Below, in pieces: positions 7,300 to 63,713 of a DNA stretch of 64,000 bases. Source of the DNA: Octopus sinensis (taxonomy: Eukaryota); contig NC_043011.1 of the NCBI RefSeq assembly GCF_006345805.1, positions 31,012,464 to 31,076,463 of the forward strand, read 5' to 3'. The position numbers were made by a program, and so were the translations under genes. Under the pieces are notes generated by a model. That model saw only the letters and a list, made by a program, of their open reading frames with translations. It did not search any database and had not been told where the DNA came from. Positions within the stretch are counted from its first letter, which is position 1; each line of letters begins with the position of its first letter.

Positions 7300-8527
7300 C
7301 ATCAACTGCCAGTGGGGTAAGCTAGAGGTAGTAGATAGTTTCCGTTATTTAGGTGACCAAGTTAGTAGTAAGGCAGCAAGCTGGCAGAAATGTTAGCATG
7401 CCAGGCGAAATGCTTAGCGGTATTTCGTCTGCTGTTACGTTCTGAGTTCAAATTCCGCTGAGGTCGACTTTACCTTTCACCCTTTTGGGGGTTGATAAAT
7501 TAAGTACCAGTTACACACTGGGGTCGATGTAATCAACTTAATCCCTTTGTCTGTCCTTGTTTGTTCCCTCTGTGTTTAGCCCTTTGTGGGCAATAAAGAA
7601 ATAAGTTAGTAGTGTAGGTAGGTGCTCTGAGAGCATAGCTGTGAGAATAAGATTTAGGCTGGACAAAGTTCATAGAGCTCCTACCTCTGCTGGCAACAAA
7701 GGGCCTCTGTCTCAGAGTGAAAGGCAGATTGTATGATGCCTGTTTGCAAACAGCCATGCTACATAGCAGTGAAACATGGGCTGTGATAGCCGAGGACATG
7801 CATAGGCTTGAAAGAAATGAAGCCAGTATACTTTGCTGGATGTGCAATGTCAGTGTGCATGTTTGACAGAGTGTAAGCTTCTTGAGAGAAAAGTTAAGCT
7901 TCAGAGATATCAGATATGGTGTGCAAGAGAGATGACTGTGCTGATATGGTCATGTGACGCATATGGACGAGGACAGCTGTGTAAAAAAGTGTTGATCTCT
8001 AAATGGGGAGGTAGAGGTAGACCCAGGAAAACATGGAACAAAGGTGGTGAAGAAGCATGTTCTTCAAACTTTGGGCCTCACAGAGACAATGACCAGTGAC
8101 CGAGACCTTTGGCGATATGCTGTGCTTGAGAAGATCCGTCAAGCCAAGTGAAATCGCAGTTGTTAGCGATGCTGGTGTCACATAAAAAGCACCTTTCAAG
8201 CATTGGGCCTTATGGAGGCAAAATGGCCGAGCTCCTTTCAAGAGTTGGGCCTCAAGGAGGCAATGACCAAGATCTTTGGCATTAAGTCATGCTTGAGAAG
8301 ATCAATCAAACAAAGTAAAATCGCATTCATGGCAGATACTGGTGTCATACAAATGGCACATAAAAGCATCCATTACACTCTCAGAGTGGTTGGCGTTAGG
8401 AAGGGCATCCAGCAGTAGAAACCATACCAAATCAGACTGGAGCCTGGCGCAGATTTCCAGCTTGCCAGCCCTGGTCAAATCATCCAACCCATGCTAGCAT
8501 GAACAATGGACACCAAGTGGTAATGAT

Positions 8528-11930: not shown

Positions 11931-13406
11931 CAGGTGACATACCTGTATGCAAGGACAAATGTCTCTTCTCAAACACAGCAAATGCAAGAAGTCTCAGTCC
12001 CCTACACACACACACACACATATGTAAATATGCATACATGCATGTAAATATGCATGCCTGTGTATGTATATATGTATGTGTTGCACTAAACAGCAGGTTT
12101 AATAATGGTACACTTAATCCATCAGCTGGCTTAACACCAGCAACTACTCCAACATAGTGGAGTCCATGCTGTTGCAAGCATTGAAGGGCCAGGCTACCGG
12201 CTTGAGGATACCTTAATCCCTCTTTCCCTCTCAGAAGCCCAGTAAAAAGTCAGGAGTACTGCCTTTCCTCTTGGCTAATCAATGAAAATAGAGAAAATGG
12301 AAATCAAAGACATTCATCCACATATTTTCCTACAGTGGATGAATTCAAGTGTATAAAATTCTGGTGTAGATTTGAACTTGGGATTTATGAGTCCAATATC
12401 TTAAGCACTTGGTATCTGCACAACCATGAAAATCATTAAACTATGAATATCACTAGAGTAAGAAAACCTATCTTTTTCAGTTCATCCCATTATCCATTCA
12501 TATAGGAGTTTCAAACAACATTCATTAAAAATATAGCTTAAGAAAAACAAACAAAATGGCTATGTGGTTAAAAAGCTCACTTTATAACCGTGTAGTTTCT
12601 GGTGCAAGTGTCTTCTAATATAACCTCAGGTCGATCAATGCCTTGCGAATGAATACTGTAGCTGATGGAAATAGTATGGAAGCCCATTGTTCGTGTATAA
12701 ATATATGTGTGTGTATGTGTGTAAAAGCATGTGTGTGTGTGCATGCATGTATATGTACATATGTGTACATGTTTGTCTCTCCACACAACTTGACAACCAG
12801 TGTTGGTTTATCTATGGCACTATAACTTAGCAGCCCAGCAAGAGAGACCAATAGAATAAGAGCCAGATTTGAGAACAAATAATTATTGCAGCTTACTTCA
12901 TCATCATCATCATCGTTTAACATCCACTTTCCATGCTGGCATGGGTTGGACAGTTTGACATGGTGCTGGGCAGCTGGAGAGCTGTCAAGGCTCCAAATGT
13001 CTGTTGTGACATGGATTCTATAGCTGGATGCCCTTCCTAATGCCAACCACTTAGCAGAGTGTTGTGAATGTTTTTTAAATGCCACAAGCACAGGTGCGTT
13101 TATGCAGCACCAGTATGGGTGCATTTTATGTGGCACCAGCACCTGAAAGGACAGGCCTGTATGTGTGGATGCACCTCAAGGCAGTGCTGCAGCTTGACGG
13201 CCAGTGTTGGTTAATTTATGTCCCAATAACTTAGCAGTCCAATAAGACAAACCGACAGAATAAGTACCAGACTTATAAAAGAAAAAAATAAGCACCACAG
13301 CTTCATTAAAATCCTCCAAGACAGTGATACACGACAAAGTAGACGATTCATGATAAAAGTAGACGATACACAATAAAGATACATGATAGACTTCTAATTC
13401 ACTAAC

Positions 13407-29529: not shown

Positions 29530-29655
29530 CTTGCAGCAATGTCTGACAAATCCATGAATTTCAACATGCCCATCAACTGCTCCACAATGAATTGAAGTTC
29601 TAACTCGTCTTCAGCAGATCTTGTTTCGGATTTAACGCAATTGTCAAGATTGCAA
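29530..29655 (-). CDS. NCAPG: NCAPG coding exon 7 (CNLDNCVKSE...ELQFIVEQLMGMLKFMDLSDIAA); not in the ORF track
   Basis: Acceptor catttcag, donor AG|GTATGA, 126 nt, phase 2-2. FI.EQL..D.S motif. Confidence 0.9.
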
Positions 29656-31655
29656 CTGAAATGAGATAATGAAATAAGAAATATTTAAATAACATTGTGT
29701 AACAAGATCTTTGTCCTTGAATAGTCAATGTAATTTCTTATTTGCTTACCCCTAGAAAGTATGAAAAATGGCTATTTCCTTACATTTTTTCAAACCCCAA
29801 AGAATCCCTTTCAACACATAGCTATGATGCTCCCCTTATGATACTCCTGCTTATGATCAGAGATTCACATACTGTCGGCCACATGCTCAAATGGTTAAAG
29901 TCAAGCAATTAACAATCAAATCTATGATATTGAGCAGAATATTTGCTTATAACAATATTTCTGCTTCAGCAGTGCTGAATCTGTTCAAAATGTAAAGGAA
30001 AATAGGTCAGTTTCAAAACATTGATGTCCAATTGACAAAAGCAATGTTTGAAAGGAATAGTAAATCATTTCCTTTGATTTCTAGATAGAAGCAAATAGGA
30101 AATAACACTTACTGGCCAAAGGCGAAAAAAATTCAAATTTTGTTACACAGTGTAATTAAATATGTATAGATGTCTTTGTGCCACCAACACTGGTTACTTG
30201 AAACCAGTGTTGGTTGGTTTGCGTCCCTGTAACTTAGCAGTTCAGCATAAGAGACCAATAGAATAAGTAAACAAAAATCCGTACTAGGATTCATTTGTTC
30301 AACTAAACCAGGCATGAGCAACCTTTTCCAAAACGTGGGCCACACAAAACATGGCTTATCATCAGATGGACCACACTAATAAAAGCATTCAAGGTAATTT
30401 TTTTGCTAGGCATGATGCCATTCAGAGATTTCTGCAAGCCAGACTGCTCATGACTGGACTTACACCCCTTAAAGCAGTGCTCCAGCATGGTCACAGTGCA
30501 ATGACTGAAACAAGTAAAAGTTAAAAAAAAAAAAAACACACACACACACACACGCACACACAAAATGAAACAAAATAGTTTTAATATTTAGGTGCTGAAC
30601 TAACAGTGAATGCGCATGGCTCAATGGTTACAACGTCAGGCTCACAATCGTGAGGTAGTGAGGTTGATTCCAAGACTAGGCTGTGTGTTGTGTTCTTGAG
30701 CAAAACACTTTTACTTATGTTGATCCAGTTCACTCAGCTGTAGAAATGAGTTGCGACACCACTGGAGCCAAACTGTATTGGCTTTTGCCTTTCCTTTGGA
30801 TAACATCAGTGGCATGGAGAGGAGAGGCTGGTATGCATGGGCAACTGCTGGTCTTCTATAAACAACCTATCCCAGACTTGTGCCTCAGAGTGGAACTTTC
30901 TAGGAGCAATCCCATGGTCATTCATGACCAAAGGAGGTCTTTACTCTGCTGAACTAACAACCAATGATGGCTTTCAAACTTTAGCATCACTAACTGAAAA
31001 CATGATGCACCTTAGCACAGAATAAAGTACAATACTGAGCAAATTAGAAATCTCAGTCTATTTAGCTAACAATCAGTCAGCACATGCATTTCATGTTTAA
31101 GCAGTTAAGAGATAAGGGGAAGTGCATCCAACCGTAACTTTAGGTGTTCAAACTGGTACCAACACAAACTATCACTAGCTAGTGTGTGTGTGTGTCAATA
31201 GATACATTTACACCATAGAAATACATCATCGTTGTTTCAACATTCACTTTTCAATTCTTGCATGGGTCAGAGAGATTTATGATGCCTTTCCAGTTACCAG
31301 CCTTAACCTGTTTCCAAGCAAACGTTTTTGCAGAATATCGGAAATAAAAAAATGACATTCATTTACAACAATCACATGATGACAAGTCAAGGTCACACAC
31401 ACACACACAAACCGACCTCGCCTGTGCTGGTGCCACGTTAAAAAGTACTCAGTCCATTCTGCAGAGTGGTTGGTGTTAGGAAAGGCATCCAGCCATAAAA
31501 ACCCTGCCAAAACAGACACAGTTGCCTGGAGTAGTTTTTCTACCTGGCCAGCTCCAGTCAGCCGTCCTACCCTTGCATGCATGGACGATGGATGTTAAAC
31601 GATGATGACCATGATGTATATTCATCATCATCATTTAACGTCCACCTTCCATGCT

Positions 31656-31696
<41 letters not shown>

Positions 31697-31791
31697 ATAG
31701 TATGACAACAAAAGAATGAATGAGACCTTGATATTATGTAAATAGAGGAATTTATCTGTAATATAATATGTGACAATTATTTGGTTGCCAT

Positions 31792-31852
31792 AATAAAACT
31801 CCGAGTTTCAGATGTTGGGGCCGAAATCTGCTCTGGCATCTCGTCAGTTATT
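31792..31852 (-). ncRNA. Minimal type I hammerhead ribozyme motif
   Basis: AAUAA-CUGACGA-GAUG...CAUC-U-GAAA-CUCGGAG-UU-UUAUU. Stem I AAUAA/UUAUU, near-palindromic stem III. Confidence 0.7.
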
Positions 31853-32923
31853 AAGACAAACAAAAATGCTGTGAAAATGACCGTTAAACAAAGGGAAATT
31901 ACTATGTGAATGACCATTATTAAGACAAACAAAAGTGCTGTTAGAATGACCATTAAATAAAGGGGAAAAAAATGAAAAAAAAAGGTGTCAATTGGAAGAT
32001 CTTAGCCAAGTGTAAGCCTTACACCAATGGCAGTGGCAAGTGCAGTCTTTGTGATATGGAAAGATGGCTCATCTGGAAAAGCATCTTAGACCCCACTACA
32101 TGTCTAAATTCAAGAACTGAACTTTCTGGATCATGTCCAAATATGGTTAAATATTTGTTACATTTTTGGTTCCCCCAAGATCACAGATAGCACCTGCTTT
32201 TTATATTGTGTCCACATACAAGCATTTTATCTCTATATATTCTTTTATATATATTTTTTTTACATATATATTTTTTATATATATATATATTTTTTTTACA
32301 TATTTTTATATCTTTATTGCTTTATATATTTTTACATATTTTTTCTGTATATTACCTTTCACCCTGCATTTTTTATTGTGCATGTGCGTATATAGACGTG
32401 TATATGAACGTATTTGTGCACATATGGGTATATATATGTGTGCGGGAGTGTACATGCATATGGTTGCATATATATGTATACATATAGGTGTGTGGGTGTG
32501 CATGCATGTGTTTCACTCGAGTGTGAGTGAGCATATGCATATATAGCATATACATATTTAGACATGTATATATAATGTGCACATATGGGCATGTGTACGT
32601 ATGTGTGCGTGTGTGCGGATATGTATATATGTACATGTGTATGGTTGCATATACATGTGCACATAGAGGCAATGTGTGTGGGTGTGCGTGCATGTGTTTC
32701 AAGCGAGTGTGAGTGAGCATATGCATATAGGCACATGTACACGGGTGTGCATGCGCACATGTGTATGTATGTACATGCGCACATTCTATAAGTGTTTTTT
32801 ACTTTCTACCTTTCAGGTTTTTTCCCTTTATTTAACGGTCATTCTAATAGGTCTTTTGTTTGTCTTAATAACAGTCACTTACTTAGTAATTTCCCTTTGT
32901 TTAATGGTCATTTTCATACCATT

Positions 32924-32984
32924 AATAATTGACAAGATGCCGAAGCAGATTTCCGCACTGACAGCCGAAACTCGGAGTTTTATT
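32924..32984 (+). ncRNA. Degenerate hammerhead motif (core mutated to UUGACAA)
   Basis: Same layout as 31792-31852 but with C3 and G8 substituted; probably inactive. Confidence 0.55.
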
Positions 32985-33018
32985 ATGGCAACTGAATAAT
33001 AGTCACATATTATATTAC

Positions 33019-33055
<37 letters not shown>

Positions 33056-33681
33056 TATATAGGTGCAGGACTGGCTGTGTGGTAAGAAGCTGGCTTCCCT
33101 ACCACATGGTTCCGGGTTCAGTTCCACTACATGGCACCTGGGGCAAGTGTCTTCTACTATAACTCCGGGCCAACCAAAGCCTTATGAGTGGATTTGGTAG
33201 ACAGAAACTGAAAGAAGCCTGTCGTGTGTGAGTGTGTGTGTTGTGTTTACCCACCCTCACCACCACCATCACTGAACAACCGATGTTGGAGTGTTTACGT
33301 CCCTGTAACTTATCGGTTCGACGAAAGAGACCGATAGAATAAGTACTAGGCTTACAAAGAATAAGTCCTGGGGTGGATTTGTTCGACTAAGAGCAGTGCT
33401 CCAACATGGCCACAACCAAACGACTGAAACAAATAAAAGAACAAAGAAAAAGAATATGTATATATACGCACGCACACACACACACAACAGGTCTATCAGT
33501 CTACCGAAATCTACTCAAGGTTTTGGTCACATCAGGGTTATAGAAGATGCTTTCCCAAGGTGTTATGCAGTGGAACTGAACTCAAAACCCTGTGGTTGAG
33601 AAGCAAACTTCTTAACCACACAACACTGCAGAAATACACACCTAACCCCCGCCTCCCCAAAAAACCCACAAATATCATTCA

Positions 33682-34050
33682 TCATTGTTCAACCGTGGTC
33701 GAGACAATGGAATTTACCATGCTACGCCAGTCTTCACGGTCCATCATAGCATTATGGAGGTCCTGTTGCTGGATGCCTGTATCCCTGGAGATTACATCAG
33801 GGTAGGAGAGTGTGTGCCCTCTGGTATTGCGAGTAGATGGCTTCCAAAGGAGAAGAGTAGAAATTGCCTCGTTTTCAGCTCTACAACAATGTCCAGCAAA
33901 CTGGACTCTCCTACCTTTTACAAGAGATAACACAGGTGGTAGTTTCCCAAGAGATGACACAGGTGGTAGTTTCCCATATATTTGCATTTTGGTTGGATGA
34001 CTCTTCCACGAGAGATTTTGAGCTCTCATATAACCATTAATAAGGGACAA
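33682..34050 (-). mobile_element. RTE-type LINE 3' coding fragment
   Basis: RRVQFAGHCCR...LLLWKP...MMDREDWRS. Internal 27-nt tandem duplication (GKLPPVSSL x2). Confidence 0.75.
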
Positions 34051-34085
34051 AAGTCAATTGATAACTAAACAGTAAAACGTCTTAC

Positions 34086-34235
34086 CTCTTAAGATAGTCA
34101 CAAAACACAATACTGTTTGGTAACACTTTTTCTAAGCTGTCTGCACCATCAACACCAAGTGAGTCCAGGTACTGACATAAAGTCTTCCAGTAGGCAACTT
34201 TTTCACAGTCAACTTCTTCTTTATTAATCAGCAAG
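34086..34235 (-). CDS. NCAPG: NCAPG coding exon 6 (LLINKEEVDCEKVAYWKTLCQYL...FCDYLK); not in the ORF track
   Basis: Acceptor gtttccag, donor AG|GTAAGA, 150 nt, phase 2-2. YW..LC.YL motif typical of CAP-G. Confidence 0.92.
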
Positions 34236-35399: not shown

Positions 35400-36140
35400 T
35401 TTCCACTTCATGTTCCTTTTTGCAGTATCTTTGAACCTCAGTCTAGATATTCCATAAGTTTCTTTTCCCCTTGTATAGTTGAGAGTAAAAGATTTGTCTG
35501 GAGAGTCTGCTATTGTCCATCCTGTGTACAAACCTCAACCAACATAAATTTCTATCGTGGCACGTAAAAAGCACCCACTACACTCACGGAGTGGTTGGCG
35601 TTAGGAAGGGCATCCAGCTGTAGAAACATTGCCAGATAAGACTGGAGCCTGGTGCAGCCTTCTGGCTTCCCAGATCCCCGGTCGAACCGTCCAACCCATG
35701 CTAGCATGGAGAACGGACGTTAAACGATGATGATGATGAGAAGGATTCCAATCATAGGAAGCAGACCAGCATGCCTTAGGACCTCTTCATTCTTGATCTT
35801 GTCAAAGGGTTAGTGTTAGGGTTTTTGCAGTATCTTTTTGAACCTCAGTCTAGATCTTCCATGTTTCTTTTCCCCTTGTATAGTTGGGAGTAAAAGATTT
35901 GTCTGGAGAGTCTGCTATTGTCTATCCTGTGTATATGCCCCAACCAACATAAATTTCTATCAATGAGGATTTCCATCATAGGAAGCAGACCAGCATGCCG
36001 TAGGACCTCTTCATTCCTGATCTTGTCAAAGAAAATGATGTTCATAATTTGTTGCATCTGTCTCATCATATATGCATGTAATATGCCTACTTGAGCTTTA
36101 TAGACTGTCCAGGTTTCAACTCCATGCAGCAAGAAAGCAT
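35400..36140 (-). mobile_element. RTE LINE fragment with an internal ~205-bp tandem duplication
   Basis: LLHGVETWTVY...IRNEEVLR..GL...LCWLGHIHRI..RL..QIFY motifs. Confidence 0.75.
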
Positions 36141-36773
36141 CATATAGAGTATATAATTAACAAGTGATAACATGTTTCAGTATGTTATGTCTTGATATAT
36201 ACCATGCAACAGACTGACATTCTATCCAGGAAAAAATATCACCTTAAACACTCAACAGCTTGAAAACTGGGATAAGCTCCAGTGAGCTGTGATATCTTCA
36301 GGTAAAGACCAATAAACAAATCTAAAATAAAAGATTAAATTACCATTTTAACATCCACTTTTCCAAGCTTGCATGGGTTGCACTGAGTTTGAGGCAGATT
36401 TTCTAAGGCTGGATGCCCTTCTTGTTACCAACCCTTGTTTATAAGCAAGGTAATATTTCCCCCTGGCCAGACATGTTACCACAGATTCATTTACAACAAT
36501 TACACAATGTCAATACAAGGAGACACAAATATACATATTCACTCACATACACATAAGGGCTTCTTTCAATTTCCATCTACCAAATCCACTTACAGGGTTT
36601 TTCTCACCTATAGCAGAAGACACTTACCCAAGGTGCCACTCAGTAGGACTGAAGCTAAAATCATGCGGTTAGTAAGCAAACTCCTTAACAACACAGCTAT
36701 ACCAGCACTTATGAAAATTATAGATGAAACATTATGAAAATTATAGATGAATAAAAAGTAAAGAATAACATAC

Positions 36774-41381: not shown

Positions 41382-43252
41382 CTGAAAAATAGAAAAAGAC
41401 AATGTTTAAATAGTTGTATTCATCATTGTTTAACATTGTGTTTCTTTCAATTAATTTTAAATATAATGAAGAATTTAGTAAAATGACTTAGTGATCATTC
41501 AGCTAGTGTTAGGAACATAAATTGTGACTAAGGTTTGGTGGAAGATTTTAATTCAAAACATATGAAAACAAGACATTTGTACTCAGAGCCAGAGCCGGTT
41601 TCAGTTGGGTTGGTAATGAAAGGGTTAAACTAGCTTTAAAGTGACAACCGCACTAATTTTCACTCTAGCACACCATTTCCTGTCCTATATATTTACCTTG
41701 TACCTTGACCTCACATCTCTCTCTCTCTTTCTCTTTCCAAATGGGGATGCTATGTATTCATCTCTTCAGCAAGACCTGCTTCTGTCCCTCTGACATACTT
41801 TCATATTCATGTCTTTGCCTTGTGGGTACTTGGGGATATACCTAGTGCTGGTGACATGTAAAAAAGCATCCAGTAAATTCTGTGAAGTGGTTGGAGCTAG
41901 GAAGGGAATTCTGCTGTAGAAAGCATGCCAAAACAGACACTGGAGCTCAGTGTAGCCTTCGGGCTCATCAGTTTATGTCAAATCATCCATCTCATGCCAA
42001 CATGGAAAAAGGAATATTAAATGATGATGACAAGTTTTGAATTAAAATCTTCCACCAAACCTTAGTCACAATTTATGTTCCTAACACTAGCTGAATGATC
42101 ACCAAGTCATTTTACTAAATTCTTCATTATATTTAAAATTAATTGAAGGAAACACAGAGTATCTCAACAGAAATATGGTAAGAAAAGAGTTAAGAACAGC
42201 AACAAAACATTTACTGATGGTGAGGGTGCAACAGTACAGTTCAATTTATTATAAAATTTGTGTTGACTAAGACTTGCCTACAGTTTGTATGTGTGTGTGA
42301 AAGAAGCCTGTTGTATATATATCATCATCATCGTTTAACGTCTGTTTTCCATGCTAGCACGGGTTGGATGGTTCGACCGGGGTCTGGGAAGCCAGGAGGC
42401 TGCACCAGGCTCCAATCTGATCTGGCAGTGTTTCTACAGCTGGATGCCCTTCCTAATGCCAACCACTCCGTGGTTGCTCATGCCAACATGGAAAAAGGAA
42501 TATTAAATGATGATGACAATGATGATGATAATAATGAATTTAAGGTTTATAAAGTATATGTAAGGTTCATGGCACACATGGTGTGTGTGTGTGTGTGTGT
42601 AACAGCATACTATAGTTGTAGAGTTGTATATAGGATTGTGTAAGAGCAATAATATGTATAAGTGGACAAGAGCTTATGTTTAGAAATATCTGGGAAAAAA
42701 GGGTGTGTATGTGTAGTGTTTGTCGGAGTGGCTGTGTGGTAAGTAGCTTGCATACCAACCACATGGTTCCGGGTTCAGTCCCACTGCGTGGCACCTTGGG
42801 CAAGTATCTTCTACTATAGCTTCGGGCTGACCTTGAGAGTGGATTTGGTAGACGGAAACTGAAAGAAGCCCGTCGTATATGTGGGTGTGTGTGTATGTGT
42901 GAGTGTGTCTGTCCCCCCAACATCGCTTGACAACTGATGCTGGTGCGTTTACATCCCCGTAACTTAGTGGCTCGGCGAAAGAGACCGATAGAATAAGTAC
43001 TAGGCGTACAAAGAATAAGTCCCGGGGTTGATTTGCTCGACTAAAGGTGGTGCTCCAGCATGGCCACAGTCAAATGACTGAAACAAGTAAAAGAGTTAAG
43101 GAGTAAAGAGAGTATACAGAGAGTATTTATATATAGAGAGATATGTGTGTGGATATGCGCATGCGAGTAAAATATGTATACACATAGTGTGTATGTGTGT
43201 GTGCGTGCACGCACACATGTGCCTCAACTATTGTTTAGAACATGTTTCTTAC

Positions 43253-44960: not shown

Positions 44961-45899
44961 ATAGTAATAATATTACTTTCTAATTTTTGGTACAAGACTA
45001 GCAATTTTGAGAGGAGGGGCAAGTTGTAACACAACAGCAATAGTAAATGGCACAGGGAGAACAATCAAATTAACCTCAGCCTATTACTGGTACTCATTAT
45101 ATTAACTTACTCAATGAAAGGAAAAGTAAAATACACCCTCAGTGACCATAGGTCAGTTATAAACCTCACCACTGAGTTTATTTTTTTTCATATTTTATCA
45201 CATACTTGTTTCACTTATTGGACAGCGGTCATGCAGCAGCACCACACTGAAGGGCTTAGTCAAACAAATATACTTATTTTTTAAGACTGGTACTTATTCT
45301 ACTGGTCTCTTATGCTGAACTGCTAGGTGATAGGGACACAAACAAACCAACACTTATTGTTAAATGGTGATGCAGACAAACAGACAGACAAATATGGATA
45401 GTTAGAGATGGACAGATAGACTGGTATGGATAGATAGATATTTTTATATTAGCTGTGATACCGTAAGAGAACCATCCGAATGTGGCCGTTGCCAGCGCCG
45501 CCCCAACTGGACTCCGTGCCCGTGGCACGTAAAAAGCACCATCCGATTGTGGCTGTTGCCAGCCTCGTCTGGCCCCCGTGCCGGTGGAACGTAAAAAGCA
45601 CCATCCGATTGTGGCCGTTGCCAGCCTCGTCTGGCCCCCGTGCCAGTGGCACGTAAAAAGCACCATCCAATCGTGGCCGTTTGCCAGCCTCGTCTTGCAC
45701 CTGTGCAGGTGGCACGTAAAAAGCACCCACTACACTCTCGGAGTGGTTGGCGTTAGGAAGGGCACCCAGCTGTAGAAACACTGCCAGATCAGACTGGGCC
45801 TGGCGCAGCCTTCTGGCGTCCCAGACCCCAGTTGAACCGTCTAACCCATGCTAGCATCGAAAACGGACGTTAAACGATGATGATGATGATATATATATT

Positions 45900-46175
45900 G
45901 ATAGAAATGGTAAGACAACAAAAGAATGAAAGAGACCTCAATATTATGTAAATAGAGGAATTTATCTGTAAATATAATGTGACAATTATTCGGTAGCTAT
46001 GATGAAACTCTGAGTTTCGGATGTCGGGGCGGAAAACCCAAGCCACCATCTCTTTTTTCGATGGCTGGATAACTGAAGAGATGGCAGCATGGGTTTCCAC
46101 CCTGACATCCGAAACTCGGAGTTTTATCATGCCTACTGAACAATTGGCATGTCACATATTATATATATATATATA
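45900..46175. mobile_element. Penelope pseudo-LTR remnant arranged as a palindrome
   Basis: 45900-46020 is homologous to 31700-31820. 45970-46055 and 46075-46165 are inverted copies. Confidence 0.7.
46068..46128 (+). ncRNA. Minimal type I hammerhead ribozyme motif
   Basis: GAUAA-CUGAAGA-stem II-C-GAAA-CUCGGAG-UU-UUAUC. Stem I GAUAA/UUAUC covaries with the 31.8-kb copy. Confidence 0.72.
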
Positions 46176-46450
46176 TATGATGGACTTCCTCACAGTTTTC
46201 CATCTACCAGCCTAGGGACATAGCAGAAGACACTTGCCGAAGTTGCTTCACAGTGGAACTGAACCAGAAATCACCTGATTGCAAAGCAAACTTCTTAACC
46301 ACACAGCCATGCTTATGCCTTATGTTGATTTTATAAAATATTCCTCAATACTAGTGATAAAGGCAGAGAACGACATAAATACTAAAAAAAAAGAAAAACA
46401 TTTAGTGAGACAAAGAAAGGAAAGAAAGAAGTAATTAAATCTTATCTTAC

Positions 46451-46534
46451 ATTTTCATATATCTTCTGCATCTCTTTGATCAGTCGTCCATGAGACTGTG
46501 AATTCTGTTGACTCTGATGGAAAATCGGTTCCAT
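46451..46534 (-). CDS. NCAPG: NCAPG coding exon 1 (MEPIFHQSQQNSQSHGRLIKEMQKIYEN); exon extends 5' to the acceptor at 46567
   Basis: Polypyrimidine tract plus AG before 46567, ATG at 46534, donor AAT|GTAAGA, phase 0. Resembles the CAP-G N-terminal helix. Confidence 0.8.
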
Positions 46535-51540: not shown

Positions 51541-53418
51541 AGATGGTACCACCGATGCTAAGACAGCAGCAGGAGAAATACCTAGCCAAAGATAAGCCCC
51601 TGTACCTCGCTTTCGTTGACATGGAGAAAGCCTTCAACAGGGTCCCCCAATCCCTTATCTGGTGGTCAATGAGGAAACTAGGGATAGATGAATGGTTAGT
51701 GAGAGCTGTGCGAGCCATGTACAGGGACGCTGCTAGTAAGGTGAGGGTTGGCAACGAGTACAGTGAAGAATTCCGGGTAGAGGTAGGGGTCCACCAAGGT
51801 TCAGTCCTCGGCCCCCTCCTATTTATCGTAGTCCTCCAGGAAATAACAGAGGAATTCAAGAAAGGATGCCCCTAGGAGCTCCTCTATGCTGACGACCTTG
51901 CTCTAATTGCAGAGTCACTATCAGAACTGGAGGAGAAGTTTCAGGTGTGGAAGCAAGGATTAGAATCGAAGGGCCTTAGAATCAACCTAGCTAAAACCAA
52001 AGTCCTAATAAGTAGGAAGGTAGACAAATCACAAACGCCTTCAGGTAGATGACCCTGCTCGATCTGTAGAAAAAGCGTAGGTAGAAACTCTATAAGATGC
52101 ACCAAGTGTAAGCTATGGACACATAAGAGGTGCAGCAATGTAAAAGGAAGGCTAACTAGGAAGATAGTTTTTGTATGTGGCAGATGCTCAGGAGCAATAA
52201 ACACTGAAAATGCGCAGAGACCAACTTCCGCCACATTCCAGGGAGAAAAACTAGAAATAGTTGATAGTTTCCGTTACCTAGGTGACCAAGTCAGTAGCAG
52301 GGGCAGGTGTGCTGAAAGTGTAACTGCTAGAGTAAGAATAGCCTGGGCAAAGTTCAGAGAGCTTTTACCTCTGCTGGTGACAAAAGACCTCTCGTTCAGA
52401 GTAAAAGGCAGACTGTATGACGCATGTGTACGAACAGCCATGCTACATGGCAGTGAAACGTGGGCCGTACTGCTGAGGATATGCGTAAGCTCACAAGAAA
52501 TGAAGCCAGTATGCTCCGATGGATGTGTAATGTCAGTGTTCATACTCGACAGAGTACCTTGAGAGAAAAGTTGGACCTAAGAAGCATCAGTTGAGGTGTG
52601 CAAGAGAGACGTTTGCACTAGTATGGTCATATGGTGAGAATGGATGAAGATAGTTGTGTGAAAAAGTGCCACACCCTAGCGGTTGAGGGAACCTGTGGAA
52701 GAGGTAGACCCAGGAAAACCTGGGACGACGTGGTGAAGCACGACCTTCAAACTTTAGGTCTCACCGAGGAAATGACTATAGACCAAGACCTTTGGAAGTA
52801 TGCTGTGTGTGAGAAGACCCAGCAGGACAAGTGAGACCATAACCCGTGGCCTCTACCTGGGATGTAGCCAGTCCACTTATGCATACCTTTCCTTCTTGGG
52901 ACACAAAACTCTACTTGTGAAGACCTGTTGAGGCAAGTGAAAATCAAAATCAAAATCAATCAACATCAATGGAAATTGTAGCTGTGATACCAGTGCCGGT
53001 GGCACGTAAGAGAACCATCCGAACGTGGCTGTTGCCAGTGCCGCCCTGACTGGCCTCCGTGCCGGTGGCATGTAAAAAGCACCATCCAATCGTGGCTGTT
53101 GCCAGTGCCGCCCTGACTGGCCTCCGTGCCGGTGGCATGTAAAAAGCACCATCCGATCGTGGCCGTTGCCAGCCTCGCCTGGCCTCCGTGCCGGTGGCAT
53201 GTAAAAACTACCATCCGATTGTGGCTGTTTGCCAGCCTCGTCTGGCACATAAAAAGCACCCACTACACTCTCGGAGTGGTTGGCGTTAGGAAGGGCATCC
53301 AGCTGTGGAAACATTGCCAAATCAGACTGGGCCTGGTGCAGCCTTCTGGCTTCTCAGACCCCAGTTGAACCGTCCAACCCATGCTAGCATGGAAAGCGGA
53401 CGCTAAACGATGATGATG
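51541..53418 (+). mobile_element. 5'-truncated RTE LINE: RT, PHD-like finger, C-terminal region, 3'-UTR minisatellite and (GAT)n tail; disrupted by stops
   Basis: LAFVDMEKAF, GVHQGSVLGPLLF, LLYADD, YLGDQV, GRPRKTW. In-frame stops at 51873-51875 and near 52050. Confidence 0.92.
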
Positions 53419-53848: not shown

Positions 53849-54779
53849 TATGTATGCCTGTCTGTGTTTATCCCCCACCACTGCTTTGACAACTGGTGTT
53901 GGTATGTTTACATTCCCATAACTTAGCAGTTTAGCAAAAAGGATTGATAGAATAAGTACTGGGGTCAATTCATTTGACTAAAAAATTCTTCAATGTGGTG
54001 CCCCAGCATGGCCACAGTCTATTAACTGGAACAAGTAAAAGATAAAGGTAACAGCATGGCAAAGAAAGGAGAATTACAAAATCTTTTGTCCTCTCATTTC
54101 TAAACAGGGAGAAGATATCAATTTATCACTAACATTTGAGAACAGGGCTTTCATCATCATCATCATCATCATCGTTTAACGTCCGTTTTCCATGCTAGCA
54201 TGGGTTGGACGGTTCGACCGGGGTCTGGGAAGTCAGGAGGCTGCACCAGGCTCCAGTCTGATCTGGCAGTGTTTCTACAGTTGGATGCCCTTCCTAATGC
54301 CAACCACTCTGTGAGTGTAGTGGGTGCTTTTTACGTGCCACCGGCACAGGTGCCAGGGGAGCCTGGCATTGGCCACGCTCGGTTGGTGCTTTTTACGTGC
54401 CACCGGCACAGAAGCCAGTCAAGGCGGCGCTGGCATCGGCCACGTTCGGATGGTGCTTTTTACGTGCCACCGGCACAGGTACCAGGGGAGCCTGGCATTG
54501 GCCACGATTGGTTGGTGCTTTTTACATGCCACCGGCACAGAAGCCAGGCAAGGCGGCACTGGCATCGGCCATGTTCGGATGGTGCTTTTTATGTGCCACC
54601 GGCACAGAAGCAAGGCAAGGCAGCGCTGGCATCGGCAACGTTCGGATGGTGCTTTTTACATGCCACCAGCACAGGTATCACAACTACTATTTCCATTGAT
54701 ATTTATTTCGAACTATTGGTCGATCGGCTCCTATCTTTCCTAATCCTGTCCTTCTCTCTTTCAAATGTGACAAAAACTT

Positions 54780-63510: not shown

Positions 63511-63713
63511 TTAAGTGTCTTCACGTTGTATATTGAAACAAGATGGAAATTTCCAACTGCGAGAGCCACCACACACTCTCAGTGCAAGCCAGTCATCTGT
63601 GTTTGATACGGAACATATGTCTTTCTCATCGTTTGTCACTTCTGTCTCAGTAGAACTTTCACAATTAGCTCCCCGGTGATTACTCTCTGTATTGTTGTCA
63701 GCAGTATCCGAAC
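63511..63713 (-). CDS. Probable last coding exon of an unidentified upstream gene (SDTADNNTES...DDWLALRVCGGSRSWKFPSCFNIQREDT*)
   Basis: Long U tract plus ttgacag acceptor before 63713 (phase 1), open frame to TAA, non-repetitive sequence. Protein not recognised. Confidence 0.6.

What the first reader, a model, noticed from the sequence alone, without database searches (positions are those of the whole stretch)
31792..31852. Hammerhead ribozyme motif on the sense strand of the NCAPG pre-mRNA (intron after coding exon 6)
Seen: the minus strand reads AAUAA CUGACGA GAUG-loop-CAUC U GAAA CUCGGAG U U UUAUU. It has both catalytic boxes, a 5-bp stem I, a near-palindromic stem III and a GUU cleavage triplet. 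Stem I covaries with the copy at 46068 (AAUAA/UUAUU versus GAUAA/UUAUC). All copies carry one extra pyrimidine before GAAA, which departs from the textbook core. Known: Penelope-like retroelements carry minimal type I hammerheads in their pseudo-LTRs, and these cleave poorly as monomers and better as dimers. Inference: this copy is transcribed every time NCAPG is, so an essential mitotic gene may carry a latent self-cleaving intron site.
Basis: partly seen in the sequence, partly recalled or inferred. Interest (0 to 1): 0.75.

Follow-up and report, generated by a model that had tools for sequence, protein, structure and literature searches.

The report
Decayed retroelement hammerhead motif in an intron
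The hammerhead-ribozyme-like sequence is really there, but it is one of four decaying copies of a Penelope-type retroelement repeat that landed in introns of the condensin gene NCAPG. Everything I could compute suggests it is an inert passenger, not a working self-cleavage site.

Summary
On the minus strand, 31852..31792 reads AAUAA-CUGACGA-GAUG…CAUC-U-GAAA-CUCGGAG-UU-UUAUU. It lies in sense orientation inside intron 6 of an NCAPG (condensin subunit 3) gene.

A strict type-I hammerhead descriptor hits only this copy and its relative at 46068-46128. The chance expectation is 0.007 hits per window.

The motif belongs to a ~250-300 bp repeat with exactly four copies in the window. They form two head-to-head inverted pairs, and their outer ends abut (TA)n microsatellites. 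This is the published insertion signature of Penelope-like elements (PLEs), whose pseudo-LTRs carry minimal hammerheads.

So this is a new member of a known kind. It has one small twist: the unpaired nucleotide sits on the 3' side of helix II, not between A9 and G10.1.

The "latent self-cleaving site in an essential gene" reading is not supported by what can be computed:
- Rfam models give no hit.
- The monomer's hammerhead fold is 7.4 kcal/mol worse than its best fold.
- The extra base in this copy is U where the other three have C, a likely CpG decay.
- There is no sense-strand dimer partner.
- The intron also transcribes the antisense of copy B, which is predicted to bury the motif in a ~240-bp duplex.
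- The motif is no better conserved than its flanks.

Interest is low.

The parts
31792..31852 (-). Hammerhead motif, copy A (the finding). Stem I is 31848-52 / 31792-96. CUGACGA is 31841-47. Helix II is 31811-31840. The extra U is 31810. GAAA is 31806-09. Helix III / the near-palindrome ACUCGGAGU is 31798-31806. The predicted cleavage site is 31797|31796.
   Evidence: 86.1 bits to the 4-copy model
31731..31977 (-). Whole repeat copy A: a ~125 nt 5' region, the motif, and a ~60-100 nt tail. It is one arm of an inverted pair with copy B.
   Evidence: 80.6% over 248 bp versus 33046-32811; arms 83-87% complementary
31848..31955 (-). 36-nt tandem array, 3.1 units, directly 5' of the motif. Each unit ends in CUUAAUAA, which is the stem I 5' strand.
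   Evidence: also seen in copy B
32811..33046 (+). Repeat copy B, antisense to NCAPG. The motif is at 32924-32984 with box UUGACAA (U3/A8) and one broken helix II pair (GAUG/CAGC).
   Evidence: 81.9 bits
46068..46128 (+). Hammerhead motif copy C, the best preserved (CUGAAGA … C-GAAA). It is antisense to NCAPG and lies in intron 1.
   Evidence: 88.4 bits
45889..46062 (-). Repeat copy D, sense to NCAPG in intron 1. The motif is at 46001-46062, with box 1 reading AAAAAGA (C3, U4 and G5 lost, or a 5' truncation). It sits head-to-head with C, a few bases apart.
   Evidence: (73.2 bits)
31659..31693 (.). (TA)n microsatellite at the 3' end of copy A. Matching (TA)n tracts lie at 33021-33061 (end of B), ~46156-46178 (end of C) and ~45889-45898 (end of D).
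34086..34235 (-). NCAPG coding exon 6. The acceptor AG is at 34237-36 and the donor GT at 34085-84. Intron 6 runs 34085..29656.
29530..29655 (-). NCAPG coding exon 7.
46451..46534 (-). NCAPG coding exon 1, with the ATG at 46534-46532. Copies C and D lie in the intron that follows.

Best explanation
The motif is the hammerhead module of an old, non-autonomous or 5'-truncated Penelope-like-element (PLE) type repeat.

Inferred origin: the element inserted twice into (TA)n microsatellites inside NCAPG introns. Each insertion produced the head-to-head inverted pair typical of PLE integration.

Inferred original role: in the element's own multimeric transcripts, the hammerhead would have cut as a dimer. 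Its near-palindromic ACUCGGAGU would form an intermolecular helix III.

In NCAPG the four copies are neutral passengers that have drifted about 15-35% apart. Copy A is transcribed with the gene, but I predict that it does not cleave at a meaningful rate. The reasons:
- It is a lone monomer with no loop-loop contacts.
- Stem I is 5 bp, all A-U.
- Stem III is 3 bp with a triloop.
- The helix II/G12 junction is weakened. The family's bulged or extra C has become U in this copy, so G10.1 faces U.
- It should be trapped in a long duplex with the antisense of copy B.

Shown here: the sequence, the copy structure, the gene context and the fold predictions. Inferred: PLE origin, the dimer mechanism and inactivity.
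For: - The motif is far beyond chance, and there are exactly four copies.
- Architecture: A/B and D/C are divergent inverted pairs, and their outer ends abut (TA)n. This matches published PLE features: high 5' truncation, an inverted 5'-truncated copy next to the unit, and a microsatellite/(TA)n insertion bias (PMC8557442). It also matches 'dual min-HHRs ~100-700 bp apart on opposite strands' (PMC4209133).
- Motif features match the PLE min-HHR consensus in PMC4209133: helix I of 5 bp, a long helix II, palindromic 15.2-16.2/loop 3, and a G10.1-C11.1 pair that can be drawn in B, C and D.
- The hammerhead pairing scheme has 85% of cells paired, against 30-50% when partners are slid. Five pairs change on both sides, and the RNAalifold alternative has none.
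- Neutral decay: A-B identity is 84% in the motif and 84% in both flanks. Box 1 is intact in 2 of 4 copies. Two of A's three private changes are at CpG sites.
- Predicted inactivity: A's hammerhead-constrained fold is -2.2 against an MFE of -9.6 kcal/mol. The MFE of the 1371-nt intron segment pairs 54 of the 61 motif bases of A with 32924-32984, and the duplex energy is -258 kcal/mol.
- Literature: single min-HHRs show no detectable cleavage and dimers cleave weakly (PMC4209133). No RNA-seq ends were found at a PLE hammerhead site in Anolis (PMC11167929).
Against: - There is no PLE ORF in the window. The only reverse transcriptase fragment is LINE-like, and there is no GIY-YIG-like motif. The PLE link therefore rests on architecture and motif type.
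- No Rfam hammerhead model matches, even at E<=10 on short stretches.
- The unpaired nucleotide is on the 3' side of helix II. The published PLE consensus places it between A9 and G10.1.
- There are only four copies, and within each inverted pair the two are probably not independent, so the covariation statistics are weak.
- Inactivity is predicted, not measured. G-U or even U-U at 10.1-11.1 is tolerated in some natural hammerheads (PMC3088659). Chaperones or co-transcriptional folding could still permit some cleavage.
Confidence: 0.75

Rival explanations
1. One reading: copy A is a functional or latent self-cleaving site that cuts NCAPG pre-mRNA in intron 6 and could modulate expression of this mitotic gene.
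For: Both catalytic boxes, A15.1-U16.1, a GUU triplet and stems I-III are present on the transcribed strand. The homodimer prediction forms an extended intermolecular helix III. Some natural hammerheads tolerate non-G-C pairs at 10.1-11.1 (PMC3088659).
Against: - No dimer partner with an intact core lies on the same strand.
- The hammerhead fold is disfavoured by 7.4 kcal/mol.
- The motif is predicted to be sequestered by antisense-B.
- There is an extra U at the core junction.
- The motif is no better conserved than its flanks.
- Tested min-HHR monomers are inactive (PMC4209133).
- From my own knowledge of ribozyme-in-intron experiments, slow intronic cleavage is generally tolerated because splicing is co-transcriptional.
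Confidence: 0.06
2. Chance resemblance: the repeat is an ordinary SINE-like or satellite-like element, and its hammerhead-like boxes have nothing to do with ribozymes.
For: No Rfam hammerhead hit. RNAalifold does not recover the hammerhead fold de novo. The extra nucleotide departs from the core consensus. No PLE ORF is nearby.
Against: The descriptor expectation is 0.0067 per 64 kb. Several independent PLE-HHR hallmarks coincide: palindromic helix III, a long helix II with compensatory changes, short helix I, opposite-strand pairs and (TA)n targets (PMC4209133, PMC8557442).
Confidence: 0.08
3. The copies are monomer offspring of a non-LTR retrozyme (a small circular-RNA retroelement with type I hammerheads), not fragments of an autonomous PLE.
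For: The unit is short (~250-300 bp), AT-rich and non-coding with a type I hammerhead. Retrozyme monomers are dispersed and often intronic, and retrozymes are phylogenetically nested with PLE pLTRs (bioRxiv 10.64898/2026.07.22.740005; PMC7229834).
Against: No direct tandem copies of the hammerhead unit occur in the window. The helix I and II loops lack the tertiary-contact architecture described for classical retrozyme hammerheads (PMC7229834). The inverted head-to-head pairs fit PLE integration better.
Confidence: 0.2
4. What matters at this locus is the inverted pair rather than the ribozyme. A and antisense-B (and D with antisense-C) form long intronic dsRNA hairpins that could be edited by ADAR or processed into small RNAs.
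For: The arms are 83-87% complementary over ~233 nt and 833-1067 nt apart. The predicted duplex energy is -258 kcal/mol, and it dominates the MFE of the intron segment. The D/C palindrome scores against hairpin RNA models.
Against: This is purely structural prediction with no expression or editing data. Such inverted repeats are abundant in repeat-rich introns and usually have no consequence.
Confidence: 0.25

Closest known systems
Minimal type-I hammerheads (min-HHRs) of metazoan Penelope-like elements (Cervera & De la Peña 2014, PMC4209133)
   Same: - Type I topology.
- Helix I of 4-5 bp with no defined loop 1.
- An unusually long helix II.
- A tiny helix III with palindromic 15.2-16.2/loop 3, implying dimer action.
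- High sequence variability in helix II.
- Mostly solitary copies, or pairs on opposite strands.
- A U3-A8 core variant exists in that family, and copy B has U3/A8.
   Different: The published consensus has an unpaired nucleotide between A9 and G10.1. Here A9 is followed directly by G10.1, and the unpaired pyrimidine is on the 3' strand, either a bulged C11.2 or an insert between 11.1 and G12. No RT/GIY-YIG ORF or pLTR tandem is present in this window.
Drosophila virilis Penelope hammerhead variant (PMC4209133)
   Same: It escapes standard descriptors, has a bulged nucleotide within helix II, and has a small palindromic helix III.
   Different: D. virilis has a 2-bp helix I and keeps the 5' bulge as well. 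Its copies are nearly identical because the invasion is recent, whereas the copies here are about 15-35% diverged.
Non-LTR retrozymes of animals (PMC7229834; bioRxiv 10.64898/2026.07.22.740005)
   Same: Short, AT-rich, non-coding repeats with type I hammerheads. They are related to PLE pLTRs, and their monomer copies are dispersed and frequently intronic.
   Different: Retrozymes are defined by head-to-tail tandem units. Here the copies are inverted pairs with no direct tandem hammerheads.
Conserved intronic hammerheads of amniotes (HH9/HH10; De la Peña & García-Robles 2010, cited in PMC7229834)
   Same: A hammerhead on the sense strand of a host-gene intron.
   Different: HH9 and HH10 are canonical, have tertiary contacts, are ultraconserved at orthologous positions, and match the Rfam models. 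This motif is minimal, is a repeat copy, is no better conserved than its flanks, and has no Rfam hit.

Membership tests
Hammerhead ribozyme (type I) | Box C3-U4-G5-A6-N7-G8-A9 | tested here: met
   CUGACGA in A and CUGAAGA in C. B has UUGACAA (U3/A8). D has AAAAAGA, which is broken.
Hammerhead ribozyme (type I) | G12-A13-A14, the A15.1-U16.1 pair, and H17 (not G) at the cleavage site | tested here: met
   GAAA, then …GAG-U-U| in all four copies.
Hammerhead ribozyme (type I) | Helix II closes directly on the core (G10.1-C11.1 next to A9 and G12) | tested here: inconclusive
   One extra pyrimidine lies between CAUC and GAAA. It can be drawn as G10.1-C11.1 plus a bulged C in B, C and D. In A it gives G-U, or an inserted U.
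Hammerhead ribozyme (type I) | Match to the curated covariance models (Rfam Hammerhead_1/3/II/HH9/HH10) | tested here: not met
   No hit at gathering score on the whole window. No hammerhead hit at E<=10 on 701-nt and 251-nt stretches.
Hammerhead ribozyme (type I) | Site-specific self-cleavage giving 2',3'-cyclic phosphate and 5'-OH ends | not testable with these tools
   Needs a transcription/cleavage assay or RNA end mapping.
PLE min-HHR (Cervera & De la Peña 2014) | Short helix I (4-5 bp), long helix II (6-8 bp or more), palindromic 15.2-16.2/loop 3 | tested here: met
   Helix I is 5 bp. Helix II is 4 bp plus up to 7 further pairs. ACUCGGAGU self-pairs with one central mismatch, -11.5 kcal/mol for the 11-mer AACUCGGAGUU that contains it.
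PLE min-HHR (Cervera & De la Peña 2014) | [quoted passage not shown] | tested here: not met
   A9 is followed directly by G of GAUG. The unpaired base is on the opposite strand.
PLE min-HHR (Cervera & De la Peña 2014) | Located in the pseudo-LTR of an element encoding RT + GIY-YIG endonuclease | tested here: not met
   In this window there is only a LINE-like RVT_1 fragment at 51543-52049(+), and no GIY-YIG-like motif.
PLE insertion architecture (Craig et al. 2021, PMC8557442) | 5'-truncated copies with an adjacent inverted copy forming inverted repeats, and insertion into microsatellites such as (TA)n | tested here: met
   A/B and D/C are head-to-head pairs. All four 3' ends abut (TA)n.
Non-LTR retrozyme | Head-to-tail tandem repeats, each unit carrying a hammerhead | tested here: not met
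   The covariance model with filters off finds four copies, and no two are in direct tandem.

The most novel reading that the evidence does not exclude
The repeat family could represent an undescribed hammerhead core-junction variant. In it, the usual unpaired nucleotide between A9 and G10.1 is replaced by a bulged or inserted pyrimidine on the 3' side of helix II, next to G12. The variant would still cleave as a dimer, and intact sense-strand intronic copies could then occasionally cut host pre-mRNAs.
Probability: 0.1. Interest if true: 0.45.

Novelty: new member of a known kind. Interest (0 to 1): 0.2.

Why it matters
It matters little for NCAPG biology. PLE-type hammerhead repeats occur by the thousands in many non-mammalian animal genomes, and a large share fall in introns, so a sense copy in some essential gene is expected.

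Two points have modest value:
- This family places its unpaired nucleotide on the 3' side of helix II. If that holds genome-wide and the consensus is active, it widens the tolerated hammerhead core-junction space. It would also explain why standard descriptors and Rfam models miss the family.
- The locus is a clean example of PLE-style inverted insertions into (TA)n that create long intronic dsRNA-forming pairs.

Tried and rejected
- **Rfam.** I searched the whole window at gathering score, and 31500-32200 and 45950-46200 at E<=10. There was no hammerhead hit. The only hits were miRNA-like ones caused by inverted repeats.
- **Species identification.** A protein homologue search with NCAPG exons found nothing at E<=1e-20. 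The source organism is unknown. I only guess that it is a non-mammalian, possibly molluscan, animal.
- **Public collection scans with motif patterns.** Metagenomes gave 16 hits, none with CUGANGA upstream, so these are chance. Viral contigs gave 0 hits. Prokaryotic genomes gave 1 hit inside a bacterial contig with no helix III, also chance. No family members outside the window were obtained.
- **Lünse, Weinberg & Breaker 2017** (PLE hammerhead dimers) is not held in the library, and the supplement of PMC4209133 is not held either. I could not check whether this junction variant is already catalogued.
- **RNAalifold de novo** gives a weak non-hammerhead consensus (-4.8 kcal/mol, no covariation). 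This neither supports nor replaces the hammerhead scheme.
- **Candidate extra copies.** The sites at 41715-41769(-) and 63648-63706(-) are unrelated to the family.
- **U3/A8 in copy B as evidence of selection.** I considered this attractive because the variant is known in Schistosoma PLEs. But A and B probably arose in one insertion, G8 sits in a CpG, and B also has a broken helix II pair. Coincidental decay cannot be excluded.

Full report
**1.

In standard hammerhead numbering the parts are:
- Stem I: 2.5-2.1 / 1.1-1.5, five A-U pairs.
- Box C3-A9, with N7 = C.
- Helix II, starting at G10.1.
- G12-A13-A14.
- The A15.1-U16.1 pair.
- Cleavage after U17, between 31797 and 31796.

A loose pattern (CUGANGA…GAAA…U) is uninformative, with 16 matches against 12 expected. 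A proper descriptor asks for a 5-bp stem I, the box, a 4-bp helix II, a 0-1 nt insert, GAAA, U16.1, H17 and a complementary 3' strand. It hits only this site and 46068-46128(+). Across 300 dinucleotide-preserving shuffles the mean is 0.0067 hits per window, and no shuffle gave two.

**2. Gene context**

Stop-to-stop translations of the minus strand contain a chain of exons. Concatenated, they align to human condensin complex subunit 3 (NCAPG, PDB 6igx_B) over residues 60-488 with E = 3.7e-71.

The start codon is at 46534. Exon 6 is 34235..34086, with AG/GT boundaries, and exon 7 is 29655..29530. Copy A therefore lies in sense orientation about 2.2 kb into the 4.4-kb intron 6.

**3. It is one of four copies of a repeat**

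Self-BLAST of the window, direct reading and a covariance model built from the copies and run with filters off give exactly four copies. They score 88, 86, 82 and 73 bits, and the next match scores 15 bits.

| Copy | Coordinates | Box 1 | Base before GAAA | Note |
|---|---|---|---|---|
| A | 31852..31792 (-) | CUGACGA | U | the finding |
| B | 32924-32984 (+) | UUGACAA | C | helix II GAUG/CAGC has one mismatch |
| C | 46068-46128 (+) | CUGAAGA | C | best preserved |
| D | 46062..46001 (-) | AAAAAGA | C | box 1 lost or 5'-truncated |

The homologous unit is larger than the motif. A and B share about 125 nt upstream, including a 36-nt x 3 tandem array whose units end in CUUAAUAA. A and D share about 100 nt downstream.

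**4. The architecture points to a Penelope-like element**

- A/B and D/C are head-to-head (divergent) inverted pairs. The A/B arms are 83-87% complementary and 833-1067 nt apart. The D/C arms are almost abutting.
- All four 3' ends run into (TA)n tracts.
- Craig et al. (PMC8557442) describe PLE insertions as highly 5'-truncated. They often have an inverted 5'-truncated copy immediately adjacent, which forms inverted repeats. They also show a strong bias toward microsatellites, (TA)n in Naiads.
- Cervera & De la Peña (PMC4209133) report min-HHRs mostly as solitary motifs, or as pairs 100-700 bp apart on opposite strands.

The window holds no PLE ORF. The only reverse transcriptase is a LINE-like RVT_1 fragment with YADD and a PHD-like finger at 51543-52559(+), and no GIY-YIG-like motif exists in any frame. 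The copies are therefore either 5'-truncated 3' ends or a non-autonomous derivative.

**5. Motif anatomy against the published PLE min-HHR**

Shared features:
- Short helix I (5 bp).
- Long helix II. The 4-bp base continues through an internal loop to up to 11 pairs, capped by a conserved G/A-UUU(U) loop.
- A tiny helix III whose sequence ACUCGGAGU is palindromic except for the central base. It can therefore form an intermolecular 4+4 bp helix in a dimer. The 11-mer AACUCGGAGUU that contains it self-pairs at -11.5 kcal/mol.

The difference: the published consensus has an unpaired base between A9 and G10.1. Here the unpaired pyrimidine is on the 3' strand.

In B, C and D it is a C followed by G12, so the canonical G10.1-C11.1 pair can be kept by bulging the neighbouring C. 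In A it is U. Because the other three copies have C in a CpG, this is most simply a deamination in copy A. It leaves either G10.1-U11.1 or a U inserted into the core junction.

I found no description of this junction variant in the sources I could read. Perreault et al. (PMC3088659) list A6a, U13a, 2a/2b insertions and a U10.1-U11.1 mismatch.

**6. Evidence that the RNA structure was once selected is modest**

On the four-copy alignment, the hammerhead pairing scheme has 85% of cells paired, against 30-50% when the 3' partners are slid. Five pairs change on both sides; 15 of 500 column shuffles reach that number. They are:
- stem I 2.5-1.5: A-U to G-C
- stem I 2.2-1.2: A-U to G-C, in D
- the C3-G8 to U3-A8 tertiary pair, in B
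- two pairs in the helix II extension

RNAalifold's own consensus is a weak non-hammerhead fold with no covariation.

Caveats:
- There are only four sequences, and the structure was derived from them.
- A and B, and likewise C and D, share diagnostic bases and probably each arose in one insertion. Differences within a pair are then post-insertion drift.
- That applies to B's U3/A8. The variant is known in Schistosoma PLEs (PMC4209133), and C3/G8 double mutants partly restore activity (PMC11167929). But G8 in this lineage sits in a CpG, and B also carries a broken helix II pair.

**7. There is no sign of selection at this locus**

- A-B identity is 84% in the motif (51/61), 84% in the 5' flank (100/119) and 84% in the 3' flank (51/61).
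- A-D identity is 66% in the motif against 89% in the tail.
- Box 1 is intact in only two of four copies.

As far as four copies can tell, that is what is seen.

**8. Will copy A cut NCAPG pre-mRNA? Probably not**

- (a) Tested PLE min-HHRs show no detectable cleavage as single motifs. They cleave only weakly as dimers or with an engineered helix III, mostly at unphysiological Mg2+ (PMC4209133). In Anolis no RNA-seq reads end at the PLE hammerhead site (PMC11167929).
- (b) A needs a partner. In a double hammerhead, each active site combines the enzyme half of one unit with the substrate half of the other. The only other minus-strand copy is D. It is 14 kb upstream in intron 1, has lost C3-U4-G5, and its stem I strand (UCAUC) mismatches A's AAUAA.
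- (c) The isolated 61-mer prefers a non-hammerhead fold. Its MFE is -9.6 kcal/mol, against -2.2 when stems I-III are enforced. For copy C the values are -12.2 and -8.8.
- (d) The antisense of copy B is transcribed about 1.07 kb before A in the same intron. The MFE of the 1371-nt segment pairs 54 of the 61 motif bases of A with 32924-32984. The arm-arm duplex is predicted at -258 kcal/mol.
- (e) From general knowledge of ribozyme-in-intron experiments, slow intronic cleavage is largely tolerated. I did not test this here.

None of this is a measurement. I put the chance of physiologically relevant cleavage at about 5%.

**9. Classification and novelty**

In mechanism and anatomy this is a PLE-type minimal type-I hammerhead in a decayed repeat, a new member of a known kind.

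Intronic location is unremarkable. About 43% of Xenopus retrozyme copies are intronic, even though introns are somewhat depleted relative to their size (bioRxiv 10.64898/2026.07.22.740005).

The only unusual feature is the position of the unpaired pyrimidine. That may explain the lack of any Rfam hit, and it would be worth a genome-wide look.

External searches for relatives in metagenomic, viral and prokaryotic collections found only chance matches. The source organism could not be identified.

**Verdict**

Interest is low, about 0.2.

Noticed in passing
window 31579-31654 (-): A near-perfect ~76-nt hairpin scores 28.9 bits against Rfam mir-965 (gathering score 43, E = 0.0011). It is built from two inverted ends of the abundant SINE-like repeat, so it is probably a repeat artefact and not a miRNA gene.
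   Followed up: partly
window 45980-46149: The D/C head-to-head palindrome scores against hairpin RNA models (MIR9555 39.7 bits, mir-605 36.4, skipping-rope 31.7 against a gathering score of 36.7). The only reason is that it is an inverted repeat. As RNA from either strand it would fold into a ~60-bp imperfect hairpin.
   Followed up: partly
window 31421-31616, and at least 20 other sites (e.g. 12899-13094, 45700-45896, 54158-54350): A very abundant ~200-bp SINE-like repeat whose end carries (GAT)n followed by (TA)n. The hammerhead repeats A and D sit in the (TA)n next to such ends, so SINE tails may supply the target microsatellites.
   Followed up: no
window 51543-52559 (+): A LINE-type reverse transcriptase fragment (Pfam RVT_1, YADD motif) interrupted by stops, followed by a PHD-like zinc finger. 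Apparently related LINE 3'-end ORF fragments lie at 7651-8148(+), 33685-34053(-) and 35848-36156(-); the three I scanned had no Pfam hit. It is not a Penelope-like element.
   Followed up: partly
window 31848-31955 (-), and the matching part of copy B at 32821-32923 (+): A 36-nt tandem array (3.1 units, 66% matches) lies immediately 5' of the hammerhead. Each unit ends in CUUAAUAA, the stem I 5' strand, so stem I could pair in alternative registers. Its significance is unknown.
   Followed up: no
window 31837-31839 (-), and the equivalent in B, C and D: All four copies have an AUG inside helix II (G-AUG), opening short ORFs of about 20-60 codons. In the Anolis Poseidon element the PLE ORF also starts at the beginning of stem II (PMC11167929). 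The reading frames are not conserved between C and D because of a 1-nt indel.
   Followed up: no
window 31978-32810: The 833-bp spacer between the A and B arms is low-complexity (CA/TG- and TA-rich, with several short tandem arrays and a 100-bp direct repeat at 32449-32543 / 32630-32729). It has no ORF or recognisable element body.
   Followed up: no
window 41715-41769 (-): CUGAAGAGAUG…CAUC shares an 11-mer with copy C, but it has 8 nt between the hairpin and GAAA and no homology beyond. The covariance model does not recognise it, so it is probably chance.
   Followed up: yes
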